From Auanema rhodensis (Eukaryota > Animalia > Nematoda), in the NCBI GenBank assembly GCA_964057225.1, contig OZ059897.1, positions 12,710,001-12,774,000 of the forward strand: a stretch of DNA of 64,000 nt, in the 5' to 3' direction. Positions 16,301 to 25,300 of this stretch are shown here, piece by piece. The notes under the pieces were generated by a model. It was not told the DNA's origin, did no database searches, and was given only the letters and a program-made list of their open reading frames with translations. The position numbers were made by a program, and so were the translations under genes. Each line of letters starts with the position of its first letter. Position 1 is the stretch's first letter.

Positions 16301-19300
16301 AAAGTAAGATTATCTCCAGAATTAGCAATAACTATCAGATGATTACAATCTTGTTTCTGTGCTGGTACCGACCAATCATTAGAAATACGAATTTCTTCTT
16401 CTTTTGATTCGCGACACTGTAGTGATAATGGTCCATGTGTTCTTGGCACGAATTTCACCAAATCCGTATCCTCGAATTGAATCTGTCGAGAATTAATCTG
16501 TCCATAGAAAATTGCTTCTTCATCACCAAACTCTTCTAAATCTTTTTCAATTGGCTCTGATTTACGAGGCAAATTCCAGCTGTACGCTGCTTGTGAATGA
16601 GATTCGGCACCTTGTCCTCCAAGAAGTTCAATTGCTAGGCGACACTTTTCATCTCCAGCACTCTGTAGTTCGATAACAAGAGGCTCTGTGCTATTTGCTG
16701 ATCGAATACGCTTCTCGATGAGTTGATTTTGAGGAGTGCGAAGCAGCTGATGATCCGACCACACGACATCTGATTCGGAAGCTTCAGCTTTCAGATAGAT
16801 TGGAGCAACTGAAATGCGATTCACATCATTTAAACATATTTCATGCGTTTGGCGAGGTTTCTGGAGCTCATATTTACATAAATTAATGACAGCGTTAAAG
16901 CTAGCCAAGCCGCATTCCTTAACCCGGAATGTTTCTTTCTTGAGCACCACCTCAGCCAGAGTTGTAGATGTGTCGACATTTGATAAGTCCACTGAAGAGC
17001 GTTGATATGTAAGTTCATTATTGAACTGGAGATTTTCAATTTTCCAACATCGGCTTACAACCTCTTGTGGAATAATCTTGATAATCTTAATAGCTTGTCC
17101 ACGCTCTTCAGGCAGGCAAATATCCTTATGAAGCGTTTCAACTTCTTCAGAAGCTGACATGGTTACAAGAGATGATGACGCTTGCAATCTGCGAGCGAAT
17201 GAAACTTCAGCCTCCAAATCACGTTCAACTCCTTCCCAAAGGGAAAGAATTTCAACAGCTCCATCTCCAGTTTCTCTAAGTTTCTCAACGCTCTTGGCTC
17301 TATTAAAATCAACACGTTGAACTGTTGCTTCAGCATATCGATCATGATGTTCATAACTCAGATCTGCTGTTGTAGAATTCATCTGTGAACTATCTGTACG
17401 TAGTGATACTGTGTCGCATACTTTAGTTTTTCTAAGAGCGTCGGTTGAAGCTAAGAATCGAGAACTTGGCAAGCTCAGTTCAACTGTTTCTTCTGTTGTT
17501 GCGTCACCAGCAGCAAGAGCTGAGAAGCTGTGATGTAAGGTGGTACTTAAGGTTACAATATGAGCATGATTCTCACGAACTAAAGGAAGTGCTCGACGAA
17601 CGAGGCTAATTCCTCCATCAGCAGTTTGTTCAGCATATTGACGGAAATGTTTCACTTCAATACATTCTTTGTTGATTTCGTCCACCAACATCTCGATTTC
17701 TGCTAAGTTTTGTGAAGCCTTTTGTAGTTCAACTGATCCCATTCCTACAGATTCTACGCGGAAGTTGCGTGATTCTTTTTCTCTCAAAGGAATGTTAACA
17801 GAAGTGAATGTCCCGCCTGAAGCTTGATTTCGAATAAGATGAGCACTGTTCATCTCGTCAATATTTGCTGATGCGCGAACATTCAAGGTCATCTGCTCCT
17901 GCAGAGTTTCCGTTTGAATTATCTCAGCCTCTAAGTCAGCTAAAATTGTTTGCCATTCAGCAGAAGCAGATTCAAGATTACATTCTTGTTCAGGTAATGA
18001 CTTGCTAACAACACGTTCACGAGATTTTGATCGAAGCTTGATCGCGGCCGATTCTCTGCGTGGTGCCATACATAACGAAGATGACGTAGTTGAAGAAGTT
18101 TCCGATGTTGCTTTTATAGCAGGAAGCATCATCGATTCCTTATATCCAGTTTTGTGAACTCTGATGGCTTCGTTCTTTTCTTCTTTACGAACGAGACTTG
18201 GTATTAGAACTGTAGATTGATCAGAAGCACACTTTGTGTTTAGCTTCTCTATCCAGCGTCTGGCTATAGGAATTGAGTGTTCTAACTCCTCAACTTCAAA
18301 CTTCTTCTGAACCATTTTACCAAACAGAGTACAAACTTGAACGTTTTCATCACCATATTCGTGATAACGACCACTGGTAATTTCTTTCAATGAAATAGAG
18401 TTGGTAAACTCTGATTGATCTTCAGAATCTGCGCACTCCAACACTTTTTCAGATTTGATCATCTGAATGACAAACTTTCGTTCTTCAGACGCACGAGAGC
18501 TCAGAGCAACAGATTTGTCAGCTAATCTTCTGGATGATCCTTTATCCATGATAATGTTAGAATCAACAGAATTGTCTTCAGAAGCTTTCAAGCTAACCAT
18601 GGATTGAGTTCTGTTTATGAGTCTGAAGGTTTTTTCATCTTCCATTTCATTCACATATGTTTGATAATCAGATGAAGCTAGATTATCAGAGCTTTCCTGC
18701 ATTTTGCCTGAATATGTCTTCTCTTTTGATGCAACTGATCGAATGTTTTCAACATCATAACGATCAATAGAATCTTGTTTTTTCAAAACAGTTTCTGATT
18801 TAGTGTTTTCTTCTTGAGAAGCTAACATATGTCTTTCATGCTCTTCACGAATGCGTTGCTTGAATAACGTTACACTTTGATCACATTCAGGTAGTTTCTG
18901 AAGTTCACTCTCAACAGATGTAGCCAAATCTTTACTGGCTTGTAATTGATGGGTTTGACTGATCTTAGCCACAACTGGAAATCTTGTTTCCGTTTCTTCG
19001 TGTTGAGGCTTACGGCTATGCAGGCGACCAAATTCTCCACAAGTTGCTGATTCTTTATTGCCAAATTCATGGAAGCGATTAGATTCTACTGATCGGTTAT
19101 GATCGTTGGCAGTTATTTGCACGTCAGCACTGCTTGCTCTGTGTTCTAATTCACAAACAAGATTCTTTTGGTCAATGCCCATTTGACGACCAACTGATTC
19201 TTGACGTTGAAGCGGGAAACTGACTTCTTCACTTCGTCCTGGTTTTCTGACAGAAAGATCTAATGTGGTTGCTGCAGCTTCTACTGTCGGTGTATTGGCG

Positions 19301-22300: not shown

Positions 22301-25300
22301 TCCATTGTACGATTCTTAGATGCATCAAGATTTGTTGTTTCCACCGTAGTTCCAGTTAAATTCTGAGAGAGCTTTGACCTGTCTACCAGAGTTTGAACTG
22401 CTTCGGTCTTTTCGGCTTCATCATGTCCGCGCATCATAGAGCTTGCTTCGGCAACTTCTTCTGTGGTGGCAGCAGTTTGAATGCTACTAGAACACTGATT
22501 CTTCATGGTGAATTGAATTTCAGTTTGAGCCGATTGACTCAATGGTGCTGTGATTGTACCTATGGATGCTCCGGAACTGATGGATTCATTTCCGAATTCT
22601 GCATGAGTGCTCTTTATCTGATCGAAGCGTTGCTCAACTCTATCTGTATGAGCTTCACTAGATGGTTGAACTCCTTGCAGAGTGACATCGGAACATTCTG
22701 AAGAAATTTTGAAAGCATTCTCAGCATTTTCGTGAAGCATTTGAGGATGTTTCAGAGTTTCTTCTGCTTCTTTGAATGAAGAACTTTGAGAAAGGCTATA
22801 TTCCTTCTCTGTATGGGAACTCTTAGCTGCTTGCATCGAACTTGAAGTGAACGTACGATCAGTAGAAGTGAATTTCTTATTGGCTTCTTCTCGTTTATCA
22901 TCTGATGCCCAGAATCCATAACAGCTTTCTTCAGAAGTTTCCTTAGCTGTTCTTGAAGCATTATCAGTGTTTCTATCTTTCAGAGCAATTGGAGCTTCTG
23001 ATGTTTCCATTGTACGATTCTTAGATGCATCAAGATTTGTTGTTTCCACCGTAGTTCCAGTTAAATTCTGAGAGAGCTTTGACCTGTCTACCAGAGTTTG
23101 AACTGCTTCGGTCTTTTCGGCTTCATCATGTCCGCGCATCATAGAGCTTGCTTCGGCAACTTCTTCTGTGGTGGCAGCAGTTTGAATGCTACTAGAACAC
23201 TGATTCTTCATGGTGAATTGAACTTCAGTTTGAGCCGATTGACTCAATGGTGCTGTGATTGTACCTATGGATGCTCCGGAACTGATGGATTCATTTCCGA
23301 ATTCTGCATGAGTGCTCTTTATCTGATCGAAGCGTTGCTCAACTCTATCTGTATGAGCTTCACTAGATGGTTGAACTCCTTGCAGAGTGACATCGGAACA
23401 TTCTGAAGAAATTTTGAAAGCATTCTCAGCATTTTCTTGAAGCATTTGAGGATGTTTCAGAGTTTCTTCTGCTTCTTTGAATGAAGAACTTCGAGAAAGG
23501 CTATATTCCTTCTCTGTGTGGGAACTCTTAGCTGCTTGCATCGAACTTGAAGTGAACGTACGATCAGTAGAAGTGAATTTCTTATTGGCTTCTTCTCGTT
23601 TATCATCTGATGCCCAGAATCCATAACAGCTTTCTTCAGAAGTTTCTCCGAGTTGTCTATCACATTGTTCGCGAGGAACCGACCTTCTTGTTAAATTCAC
23701 TCTCTCATCTTGAATAGTTTGATCAATTTGTACAACTTCAACAGCTACACTAGATTCACGAGAAGCCGCAGTAGTGAGAGATGCGTGATCAACCCGTTTA
23801 GAATTTCGATTGGTCTCTCTATCAATATGTTCTTGGACTATTCCAACTAGATGAGTACTATCTTCCACAGTTTCTTCAGATGATTCTTGACATTTCAATT
23901 GTGCTTTGAGAGCAAGCCGATCTTCTTGAACGCTTTCAGTTGTTTCAAATTGTTCTTTTGGTTTTTCTAATTTGTTGCTTTGAATTTGGGATTTACTATT
24001 GCTAATTCTTCGAATTGATTGTTCTTTGATTTCTTTTTCTGCAACAAAACAACTAAAGTAAAGTTTCCAAAAAAAAACATTATTTTCAAAATATTAATAC
24101 AATCCTTATATTTAAATCTCTAAACTTAACTATTCTAATCCAAAATAAATAAGATTATTGTTATCAAAATATTCTAGGATTTTTTAGTATTTTTAATTTT
24201 AATGAAAGCTACAAGCATTTTTATTATTTTCTCCTTTCTCACTACTTTATACAAAAAAAAAGGAAAAAATTGAATCGTTCGCAACTAAAAAAAAGATGAT
24301 TGTTATTGGTGTTTGATAGCTATTGACTTGTTAAATCAAAAACTTAAAAAAATCTAATATTCTAGCAAAACTGAGTCAAAAGACTTCCACCAATACAAAT
24401 CATCTCCATATTGTCGCTTAGATCAATTATGATCATCCCTTCACGTTTATCTGCAAATCAAAAAGTTTCTTTCAATAAACTTTTTAACTTTAGAAATGAG
24501 AAATTAGCGCTTCCTATATCAAAATGAACCAAGTACCAATTTGTTTTACTTTTACTTATTTTTGAAATAAAAAATTGAAATGTTTGAGAAATAATAGAAT
24601 TTTAGTTAAGTAATGGAATTTGATGATTAATATATCTAAAGCTTGAAAAAGTTATAGGAATGTAAAATGTTTTAAAGGTGATCTTTAGGATTTGATATTT
24701 AGCCAAGTACCATAAAGCTTATTTGAAAAGTGAAAACATGCAAAAAAGGGAATGTTTGGGAAAAAAAGCAAAAGCTGCTCACCTTCTTCTTGACGATATG
24801 AGCTCGTCTGCTGATAATACTGTTGCTGATCAATCTTCTCATGTTGATGGACTGAGATATGTTCATCAGTTTGCTGTTCCTTCGTCTCGAACATAGTTTG
24901 CATAGTCATTGTACTGCTACTGCTTCTGCTCAAGCCGCTTTTTGAAATTTGTTTAAATTGTGAATCAGAATCCACTCGCTTGTCGTATTCGATGAATAAT
25001 CGTGTTCGTTGATAGTTGGCCATTTGTTGACGGAAAACAAGCCATACAGTCGTTTCAGCAAGTTGATCACGTCTACGAAGACGGAGCTCTTGCTGGAACG
25101 TCTCTTCCGGCTGTCGTCGGTGGTGCTCAGAAAGGGATTTCAGGTGGAAAGAGGCAGAACTAGTCGTAGCCGCTTGGGGCAAGGTTACGCGCGTGTCTGC
25201 CGTTGCCGGCAACATTGTACGAAAGCAAGGCAGGTGCCAATTTTTTTCTAAGCGGGCAGCATAAAGGGATTCAGAAGAAATTATTTGGCGTTCTAATGTT

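What the first reader, a model, noticed from the sequence alone, without database searches (positions are those of the whole stretch)
16900..23900. Hidden super-repeat zone 1: ten ~236-aa units; a candidate titin/nebulin-like membrane-anchored ruler with a vWA tip
An [EQ][FYC][GA] motif followed by ..I.AP/..KP recurs at about 23304, 22599, 21894, 21195, 20490, 19776, 19068, 18360, 17640 and 16917. Spacings are 705, 705, 699, 705, 714, 708, 708, 720 and 723. The three near-identical copies are therefore only the youngest end of an old array that diverges with distance. The unit is about twice the zone-2 unit (roughly 6 x 40 aa versus 3 x 40 aa). CPNA-1 is known to sit at muscle integrin-adhesion sites and bind PAT-6 and UNC-89. 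My inference is a TM-anchored, two-zone, length-tunable filament that positions a vWA domain (DYTKS MIDAS-like motif present) at a set depth in the cell. I know no named domain for these repeats.
Basis: partly seen in the sequence, partly recalled or inferred. Interest (0 to 1): 0.8.

Follow-up and report, generated by a model that had tools for sequence, protein, structure and literature searches.

The report
Giant repeat exon of nematode CPNA-2
The ten hidden ~235-residue repeats are real and ancient, but they belong to the worm's little-studied giant copine protein CPNA-2 rather than CPNA-1, and they form an undescribed, nebulin-style "repeat of repeats" whose unit length has been kept almost constant across nematodes.

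Summary
Observation confirmed. One 11.8-kb exon (window 12203-24038, minus strand) holds ten tandem units of 235-239 aa (nt 16564-23652). A profile built only from other species' units finds exactly these ten (E 1e-56 to 8e-9), with no hits in reversed sequences. Three units are a recent 99%-identical triplication. U6-U9 have one-to-one orthologues in all six relatives compared, and U10 in one. Each unit is six ~39-aa simple repeats, each starting with a KASSEES-like motif. The neighbouring 120-aa "zone 2" unit is homologous to half a unit.

Interpretation partly supported. The gene is the CPNA-2 orthologue, not CPNA-1, so the PAT-6/UNC-89 binding data do not transfer. The copine tip and the DYTKS motif are real. 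No classical TM helix was found. A conserved hydrophobic and cysteine-string N-terminus could anchor the protein to a membrane. RNA contigs show the exon is transcribed, but the prevalent assembled isoform ends before it.

The repeat matches no Pfam family. It has only 82 relatives among 1.84 billion representative proteins; all nine that could be named are nematode. AlphaFold gives no confident fold.

Most likely it is a long, acidic, length-conserved tether or multivalent scaffold in muscle. The ruler idea is untested. Scan note s1-404726 covers zone 2 on this same window.

The parts
12203..24038 (-). Giant exon (11,836 nt, about 3,945 codons) holding zone 1, zone 2 and short flanks. The acceptor is ttgcag| at 24038. 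The donor is |gtacgt after 12203.
   Evidence: Open frame. A GT..AG joint 24783->24038 appears in an RNA contig of run X1, and contigs of X1 and X3 cover 23700-24099. Splice sites and phases were read from the sequence. Colinear with homologues up to 12211/12202, continuing at 11790.
22948..23652 (-). Unit U1 (ORF aa 83-317), young copy
22243..22947 (-). Unit U2 (aa 318-552), young copy
21538..22242 (-). Unit U3 (aa 553-787), young copy
20833..21537 (-). Unit U4 (aa 788-1022)
   Evidence: iE 8.9e-14
20128..20832 (-). Unit U5 (aa 1023-1257)
   Evidence: iE 2.6e-21
19417..20127 (-). Unit U6 (aa 1258-1494). It has a one-to-one orthologue in the relatives compared.
   Evidence: iE 7.3e-25
18703..19416 (-). 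Unit U7 (aa 1495-1732), the best-conserved unit
   Evidence: iE 1.7e-56; (Smith-Waterman 306-407 against its orthologous unit, about 40-130 against other units)
17992..18702 (-). Unit U8 (aa 1733-1969)
   Evidence: iE 2.2e-49
17275..17991 (-). Unit U9 (aa 1970-2208)
   Evidence: iE 6e-12. It was not in the seed alignment..
16564..17274 (-). Unit U10 (aa 2209-2445), the most degenerate unit. Its tail overlaps the first zone-2 unit.
   Evidence: iE 8e-9. It was not in the seed alignment. Orthologue in C. auriculariae, score 460. A zone-2 HMM hit at aa 2384-2503.
12292..16563 (-). Zone 2: about 12 units of 120-121 aa (3 x 40 aa), homologous to half a zone-1 unit
24783..27477 (-). Large upstream exon (898 aa). 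Its donor is used by both isoforms.
   Evidence: RNA contigs in all four runs. Homologues in strongylids and Caenorhabditis. Fused directly to the copine domain in H. contortus P0128.
24179..24450 (-). Alternative terminal exon of a short isoform. A stop codon lies at about 24362-24364. This isoform has neither the giant exon nor the copine domain.
   Evidence: Joint 24783->24450 in all four runs. Reading frame taken.
10373..11791 (-). Downstream exons: a linker exon (11791 to about 11610) and the copine/vWA-like domain exons. The GIDYTKSN motif lies in the exon at 11275-11436.
   Evidence: tblastn colinearity with CPNA-2. Pfam PF07002 matched exon by exon. ORF translations.
28140..29690 (-). 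Eight small upstream exons of the same transcript
   Evidence: GT..AG joints in all four runs. Homology to the N-terminal parts of relatives.
30148..30626 (-). Exon that opens with a cysteine string ([20 protein letters not shown]). The preceding exon ends ...GILGLQ|gtatgt at about 30923.
   Evidence: Sequence and splice signals. Homologous to the Caenorhabditis hydrophobic and Cys-string segment and to the downstream PGFRPL block. No RNA evidence was collected here.

Best explanation
Shown: the region is the first repeat zone of one giant, alternatively used exon of this nematode's CPNA-2 orthologue (C. elegans cpna-2/B0228.4, 'Copine family protein 2'). It holds ten tandem super-repeats of 235-239 aa. 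Each super-repeat is built of six ~39-aa simple repeats, and each simple repeat carries three hydrophobic clusters about 13 aa apart. Three super-repeats are a very recent triplication. The others are ancient. U6-U9 are individually orthologous to specific units in all six relatives compared, and U10 in one of them.

Inferred: the repeat zone works as a long, acidic (net charge -112 over 2363 aa), Ser/Thr/Glu-rich polypeptide that is largely non-globular. Its unit length is under selection. It would serve as a tether or multivalent scaffold that spaces the C-terminal copine (vWA-like) protein-binding domain from an N-terminal hydrophobic and cysteine-string segment, which is probably lipid-modified and membrane-bound. 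Each super-repeat would present the same small set of conserved aromatic and hydrophobic marks (G-F-W; F-G-I; E-F-G...G.L..AP) as periodic docking sites.

The tissue is probably muscle, by transfer from C. elegans CPNA-2. Isoform choice decides whether the tether is present at all.
For: Array and hierarchy.

Unit length: 279 adjacent unit spacings across the family have mean 234.0 and SD 5.6 aa, although paralogous units are only 10-20% identical. This argues for selection on length.

Selection on individual units: position-specific orthology of U6-U9, with Smith-Waterman scores of about 125-485 (about 290-485 for U7-U9) against about 40-130 for non-orthologous pairs.

Identity as CPNA-2: colinear with P0016 aa 29-2702. 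Copine exons score 482 bits against CPNA-2 and 174 bits against CPNA-1. PF07002 is matched exon by exon.

One protein can hold everything. The C. bovis model P0046 (7741 aa) has the Cys-string, the upstream-exon homologue, 14 zone-1 units, 12 zone-2 units and the copine domain.

Transcription and splicing.

Non-globular state: AF2 of U7 with a 97-row alignment gave pLDDT 53.7 and pTM 0.23, with only a low-confidence helix at residues 160-232. AF2 of three zone-2 units gave pLDDT 30.5.

Composition.

Muscle: CPNA-2 was enriched in muscle-specific TurboID samples (PMC8446793).
Against: No experiment bears on function, localisation or conformation. AF2's failure may reflect shallow, heterogeneous alignments rather than true disorder. 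The units have about 33% hydrophobic residues and little Pro or Gly, which is not typical of strongly disordered chains.

The joint linking the upstream exon to the giant exon rests on one contig with only 29 nt on one side, below the tool's own 31-nt bridging rule. Assembled contigs favour the short isoform.

No RNA evidence was collected for the giant-exon-to-copine junction or for the Cys-string exon.

Unit number varies widely between species: 8 to 17 units in the first set of relatives and up to 19 in the wider set. That is awkward for a strict ruler.

cpna-2 null and nonsense alleles were used in complementation crosses in C. elegans (PMC5345728), which suggests the gene is not essential.
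Confidence: 0.5

Rival explanations
1. One reading: a TM-anchored CPNA-1 titin/nebulin-like ruler. Its number of 236-aa units would set the depth at which a vWA domain sits at muscle integrin adhesion sites, where it would bind PAT-6 and UNC-89.
For: Hierarchical simple-repeat and super-repeat organisation with tightly conserved unit length. A copine/vWA tip. A possible N-terminal membrane anchor. CPNA-2 is muscle-enriched in C. elegans.
Against: The gene is CPNA-2, not CPNA-1. In Warner et al., UNC-89 Ig1-5 bound only the CPNA-1 copine domain. No classical TM helix was found. No rigid fold is predicted. Unit number differs about two-fold among relatives without known matching differences in anatomy. 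The prevalent assembled isoform lacks the repeats.
Confidence: 0.12
2. A folded rod or filament-binding array. The 39-40-aa simple repeats would adopt a regular structure, either helical on a partner as nebulin does on actin, or a beta-rich solenoid. One module would fit each subunit of a periodic filament, and the 6-module and 3-module super-repeats would match a higher-order period of that filament. AF2 would simply fail to model it in isolation.
For: Strict conservation of the 39-, 120- and 235-aa periods. Significant 13-aa hydropathy period. Low Pro and Gly content with about 33% hydrophobic residues. Alternating hydrophobic and polar runs in the consensus. Nebulin is also unstructured when alone (established knowledge).
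Against: No partner is known. The chain is strongly acidic, unlike nebulin. No significant 3.6- or 2-residue amphipathic period was found. pLDDT was 30-54.
Confidence: 0.2
3. A polyanionic, phospho-regulated or cation-buffering region. The S/E-rich KASSEES-type motifs would be kinase targets or low-affinity Ca2+ sites, so that bulk charge matters rather than length.
For: Ser 14%, Glu 11% and net charge -112. One S-S-E-E-type motif per simple repeat. Copines are Ca2+-linked proteins (established knowledge).
Against: This does not explain why unit length and unit-specific aromatic marks are conserved, or why individual units keep one-to-one orthologues. No C2 domains or Ca2+-binding motifs were detected.
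Confidence: 0.08
4. Mostly neutral repeat expansion. The array would be tolerated filler produced by unequal crossing-over, with function residing only in the copine domain and the N-terminal parts.
For: A recent 99%-identical triplication. Variable unit number between species. The giant exon is skipped in some isoforms. cpna-2 mutants appear viable.
Against: An 11.8-kb frame stays open in an AT-rich genome. Units U6-U9 have been kept individually since the split of the Strongylida and Caenorhabditis lineages. Zone-2 unit number is nearly constant, at 10-13, in every relative. Length SD is only 5.6 aa.
Confidence: 0.08

Closest known systems
C. elegans CPNA-2 (cpna-2, B0228.4 with former B0228.3; 'Copine family protein 2') and its giant orthologues in other nematodes
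   Same: Colinear over the giant exon and the copine exons. Same 235-aa and 120-aa units. Same C-terminal copine domain, with core exons 78-100% identical. Homologous upstream exons and Cys-string.
   Different: Only 30-37% identical over the repeats. Ten zone-1 units here against 17 (9+8) in the Elegans-group proteins. A private triplication of one unit. The first Caenorhabditis block of nine units has no counterpart in this window.
   Same: An atypical copine: a C-terminal copine domain, no C2 domains, a non-copine N-terminal part, and muscle expression (PMC3583664).
   Different: A paralogue, not the orthologue. Copine exons score 174 bits against 482 for CPNA-2. CPNA-1 matches nothing else in the window. 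It is 1091-1107 aa, was not among the 82 hits of the unit-profile search, and has a predicted TM at residues 23-45.
Nebulin (vertebrate thin-filament protein; about 35-aa simple repeats in 7-module super-repeats of about 245 aa)
   Same: Two-level organisation of simple repeats into super-repeats of very similar size (6 x 39 = 235 aa). Position-specific marks occur once per super-repeat. Unit length is conserved. The protein is giant, muscle-associated and alternatively spliced.
   Different: No sequence similarity (no PF00880 match). Acidic rather than basic. No SDxxYK motif. No known filament partner. No helical prediction for most of the unit.
Titin PEVK and other elastic or disordered repeat segments of giant muscle proteins
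   Same: A long, charged repeat region with no confident fold prediction, in a muscle-enriched giant protein. Exon usage controls the length.
   Different: Very low proline content (2%). Much longer and strictly sized units. The flanking domains are a copine domain and a Cys-string rather than Ig/Fn3/kinase domains.

Membership tests
CPNA-2 (nematode giant atypical copine) | Copine domain closer to CPNA-2 than to CPNA-1 | tested here: met
   tblastn bits on window exons below 12000: C. elegans CPNA-2 482, N. brasiliensis CPNA-2 532, C. elegans CPNA-1 174, C. briggsae CPNA-1 242, B. malayi CPNA-1 289.
CPNA-2 (nematode giant atypical copine) | Giant repeat region colinear with that of CPNA-2 | tested here: met
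   P0016 aa 29-2702 aligns colinearly to window 19869-10373. P0003 aa 3-2624 aligns in one HSP. Units are orthologous one to one.
CPNA-2 (nematode giant atypical copine) | Upstream exons and Cys-string belong to the same gene | tested here: inconclusive
   RNA joint 24783->24038 in one contig, with a 29-nt side. Single gene models in C. bovis, C. brenneri and C. sp. 36. H. contortus P0128 joins the upstream exon to the copine domain. No reads were laid over the Cys-string exon.
CPNA-1 | Orthology of the copine domain and of the N-terminal region with a TM at residues 23-45 | tested here: not met
   weak copine match only, and no match of CPNA-1 residues 1-837 anywhere in the window.
CPNA-1 | Binds PAT-6, UNC-89 Ig1-3, UNC-96, LIM-9 and SCPL-1 | not testable with these tools
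   Warner et al. report that UNC-89 Ig1-5 bound only the CPNA-1 copine domain among the seven C. elegans copine domains.
Copine domain (Pfam PF07002) | Match to the family profile | tested here: met
Four exons match profile positions 15-67 (33.2 bits), 66-92, 119-142 and 184-217, in colinear order. Only the first exceeds the 27-bit cut-off on its own.
Copine domain (Pfam PF07002) | MIDAS residues DxSxS...T...D | tested here: inconclusive
   The first motif is present as D-Y-T-K-S (GIDYTKSN). The distal T and D were not mapped.
Classical copines | Two N-terminal C2 domains | tested here: not met
   No C2 hit in the giant exon or the 898-aa upstream exon.
Nebulin repeat proteins | Nebulin repeat (PF00880, SDxxYK), basic charge | tested here: not met
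   No Pfam hit in the whole exon or in 97 individual units. Net charge -112.
Nebulin repeat proteins | Simple repeats grouped into super-repeats of fixed size | tested here: met
   Autocorrelation peaks at lags 39, 77 and 116. Six-row consensus. Spacing 234.0 +/- 5.6 aa. This is an analogy, not homology.
Titin-like proteins | Ig/Fn3 domain super-repeats | tested here: not met
   No Ig or Fn3 Pfam match in the exon.

The most novel reading that the evidence does not exclude
CPNA-2 is a nematode-specific, nebulin-like molecular ruler or periodic tether. Each 39-aa module would contact one subunit of a periodic muscle structure, and each 235-aa super-repeat would contact one higher-order period. 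[quoted passage not shown] The protein would be anchored to a membrane by a palmitoylated Cys-string at one end and capped by a copine domain at the other. Unit number and isoform choice would then set a physical distance in the sarcomere.
Probability: 0.12. Interest if true: 0.8.

Novelty: new variant of a known kind. Interest (0 to 1): 0.5.

Why it matters
Hierarchical super-repeat proteins such as nebulin and titin are the textbook candidates for molecular rulers, and invertebrate equivalents are scarce. This work shows that a whole family of giant nematode copine proteins, including C. elegans CPNA-2, is built on a three-level repeat (13 -> 39 -> 120/235 aa). No domain database names this repeat, and no paper I could find describes it.

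Unit length is held to about 2% (SD 5.6 of 234 aa), and homologues turn up in each of the three major chromadorean nematode clades sampled by name. C. elegans carries the orthologue, and mutants appear viable. The ruler, tether and scaffold ideas could therefore be tested directly there by tagging both ends and by deleting or adding whole units.

The work also corrects a mis-assignment to CPNA-1 that would otherwise send experiments to the wrong gene.

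Tried and rejected
- Tandem Repeats Finder sees nothing because its longest period is 500.
- Pfam on the whole exon and on 97 single units gave only scattered chance-level hits.
- The ESM Atlas feature search gave no usable hit.
- Two AlphaFold2 runs gave low-confidence models: one zone-1 unit with 97 aligned units, and three zone-2 units with a staggered, mainly orthologous alignment. 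I ran no fold search on them, because matches to such models are meaningless.
- The CPNA-1 reading was rejected by direct comparison.
- A classical TM helix in the giant exon or the 898-aa exon was rejected: the best 19-residue Kyte-Doolittle windows score 1.38 and 1.57, below the 1.6 threshold.
- The unit HMM does not significantly hit the upstream exon, despite an EFG-like motif there.
- Searches for amphipathic alpha (3.6) or beta (2.0) hydropathy periods were not significant.
- Literature searches for B0228.4/tag-308 (0 papers) and for copine plus super-repeat found no description of the repeats.
- The organism was not identified. The best identities are 45-48% to strongylids on the upstream exon and 35-37% on the repeats.

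Full report
**What is there**

The region lies inside one open frame of 3,938 codons on the minus strand (12082-23898). Splice signals and RNA contigs define the exon as 12203-24038. It has moderate G+C (0.37-0.41) and is flanked by AT-rich introns.

With the three near-identical copies collapsed to one, it forms a chain of 8 at 228-243-aa spacing. The longest chain in 2000 shuffles was 2.

The three young copies are 705 nt each and 99% identical. Apart from the boundary codons they differ by only 2-4 nt.

**Is the old array real?**

Pairwise Smith-Waterman scores between putative units are mostly in register. Z-scores reach 10.8 (U6-U7), 10.3 (U5-U7) and 10.3 (U7-U8).

An HMM seeded on U3-U8 found many tandem, full-length, in-register units in homologues from other nematodes. 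It found none in reversed sequences.

I rebuilt the HMM from 55 homologue units only, with no window sequence. It finds exactly ten tandem full-length units in the window:
- Starts at aa 83, 318, 553, 788, 1023, 1258, 1495, 1733, 1970 and 2209.
- Spacings are 235 five times, then 237, 238, 237 and 239.
- iE ranges from 1.7e-56 to 8e-9. This includes U9 and U10, which were never seeds.

**Hierarchy**

Circular autocorrelation of the unit profile peaks at lags 39 (0.146), 116 (0.131) and 77 (0.111). The maximum over 200 column shuffles was 0.113.

Written in rows of 39, the consensus shows six simple repeats, each opening with a KASSEES-like motif. Marks specific to the super-repeat occur once per unit: W13, F78-G-I80, F117-G118 and G129.L131..P134.

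Column hydropathy has a significant 13.1-aa period, which means three hydrophobic clusters per simple repeat. No significant alpha or beta amphipathic period appears.

Zone 2 (aa ~2384-3869) holds about 12 units of 120-121 aa, each 3 x 40 aa. Its profile aligns to half of the zone-1 unit (hhalign probability 94%, E 1.5e-7). The whole exon is therefore about 100 related simple repeats arranged in two kinds of super-repeat.

**Which gene?**

The word-indexed protein search returned only 29-37% identical proteins. They are giant proteins of strongylids and Caenorhabditis, most carrying Pfam copine domains. They include C. elegans 'Copine family protein 2', the former model B0228.3, and CBR-TAG-308.

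The window is colinear with C. elegans CPNA-2 (P0016) from aa 29 to its end. This stretch includes the downstream copine exons.

Those exons match Pfam PF07002 exon by exon. They score 482 bits against C. elegans CPNA-2 and 532 against N. brasiliensis CPNA-2. Against C. elegans CPNA-1 they score only 174 bits. CPNA-1 matches nothing else in the window.

In Warner et al. 2013, UNC-89 Ig1-5 bound only the CPNA-1 copine domain, and only CPNA-1 had a predicted TM (PMC3583664).

**Gene structure and expression**

Four runs of one study hold spliced contigs with GT..AG introns on the minus strand. The exon 24783-27477 and eight smaller upstream exons appear in all four runs.

From the donor at 24783 two acceptors are used:
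- 24450, in all four runs. This leads to a stop at about 24362 and gives a short isoform without the repeats and without the copine domain.
- 24038, the giant exon. This is seen in one X1 contig at depth 4.9, with 29 nt on the upstream side. That is just under the tool's own 31-nt bridging rule.

Contigs of X1 and X3 cover 23700-24099, so the exon is transcribed. Both splices are phase-compatible. The giant-exon donor at 12203 is also in phase with the acceptor at 11791.

H. contortus P0128 (906 aa) joins the upstream-exon homologue directly to the copine domain. The giant exon therefore behaves as a cassette.

C. bovis P0046 (7741 aa) carries the N-terminal segment, the upstream-exon homologue, 14 zone-1 units, 12 zone-2 units and the copine domain in a single model.

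**Membrane anchor**

No 19-residue window reaches Kyte-Doolittle 1.6 in the giant exon or the 898-aa exon.

Caenorhabditis relatives have a hydrophobic stretch followed by a cysteine string near the N-terminus. The window has the counterpart. One exon ends ...GILGLQ|gtatgt, and the next opens [20 protein letters not shown] after a cttcag acceptor, in phase.

This looks like an acylation-type or hairpin anchor, with basic residues on its C-terminal side. It is an inference and is untested.

**Evolution**

U6-U9 each have one clear orthologous unit in N. brasiliensis, H. contortus, Dictyocaulus, C. auriculariae and two Caenorhabditis-type proteins. The orthologous scores are about 125-485, and about 290-485 for U7-U9. 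Background pairs score about 40-130. U10 has a clear partner in C. auriculariae.

U1-U3 resemble units 11-13 of the Caenorhabditis-type array most closely, and they are a private triplication.

Unit counts are lower bounds: 8 in N. brasiliensis, at least 11 in H. contortus, 7 in Dictyocaulus, and 17 (9+8) in Elegans-group proteins.

Zone-2 number is nearly constant at 10-13 everywhere. Across 279 adjacent pairs the unit spacing is 234.0 +/- 5.6 aa. Paralogous units are only 10-20% identical, while orthologous units are 29-37% identical.

**Distribution and novelty**

The exhaustive profile search found 82 representatives at E<=1e-3 among 1.84 billion proteins. Ten were looked up. The nine that carry an organism name are all nematodes: C. 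bovis, C. auriculariae, Steinernema, Bursaphelenchus, Globodera, Meloidogyne, Toxocara, Wuchereria and Syphacia. Those with intact C-termini carry a CPNA-2-type copine domain.

Pfam and the ESM Atlas give nothing. I found no paper describing these repeats.

What is known about CPNA-2 is thin. It is muscle-enriched in TurboID samples (PMC8446793). Null and nonsense alleles have been used in complementation tests (PMC5345728).

**Conformation**

AF2 on U7 with 97 aligned units gave pLDDT 53.7 and pTM 0.23. It predicted no secondary structure in residues 1-159 and a low-confidence helix at 160-232.

AF2 on three zone-2 units gave pLDDT 30.5.

Zone 1 has Ser 14%, Thr 8%, Glu 11%, Pro 2%, Gly 3% and about 33% hydrophobic residues. 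Its net charge is -112 over 2363 aa. The state of the chain remains open. My working reading is 'non-globular', not 'proven disordered'.

**Verdict**

The array is real and ancient. It is part of an undescribed three-level repeat architecture of the nematode CPNA-2 family.

The most likely role is a long, acidic, length-conserved tether or multivalent scaffold. It would sit between a lipid-type membrane anchor and a copine protein-binding domain in muscle, and would be switched in or out by splicing.

The strict ruler idea is not excluded but has no direct support.

All searches were made exon by exon.

Noticed in passing
window 12292-16563 (-): Zone 2 has about 12 units of 120-121 aa. Its unit number is almost invariant (10-13) in every relative examined, from strongylids to Caenorhabditis, whereas zone-1 unit number varies more than two-fold.
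   Followed up: partly
window 24179-24450 (-): An alternative terminal exon gives a short isoform ending ...[29 protein letters not shown]. It is the form assembled in all four RNA runs. It lacks both repeat zones and the copine domain.
   Followed up: partly
window 30148-30626 and about 30923-31589 (-): A cysteine string (nine Cys within 16 residues) follows a hydrophobic stretch near the predicted N-terminus. It is conserved in Caenorhabditis relatives as ...WMVCVCCRCCLCKC and is a candidate palmitoylation-type membrane anchor.
   Followed up: partly
window 29682-29711: A perfect (TGT)10 microsatellite on the + strand encodes a poly-Gln run in an expressed upstream exon of the same gene.
   Followed up: no
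window 41-3800 (+): The 3' exons of a receptor tyrosine phosphatase (LAR/PTP-3-like, two PTP domains) converge on the 3' end of the copine gene.
   Followed up: no
window 40500-41300 (-): Exons of a Rab3-like small GTPase ([14 protein letters not shown]..., [22 protein letters not shown]...).
   Followed up: no
window 46490-46940: A long CT/GA-type dinucleotide-like simple repeat, which reads as SLSLSL in translation.
   Followed up: no
P0016 versus window 19869: The curated C. elegans 2702-aa CPNA-2 isoform starts inside zone 1, at about unit 15 of 17. A 1133-aa C. brenneri fragment holds only five zone-2 units plus the copine domain. This hints at nested isoforms with different repeat numbers.
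   Followed up: no
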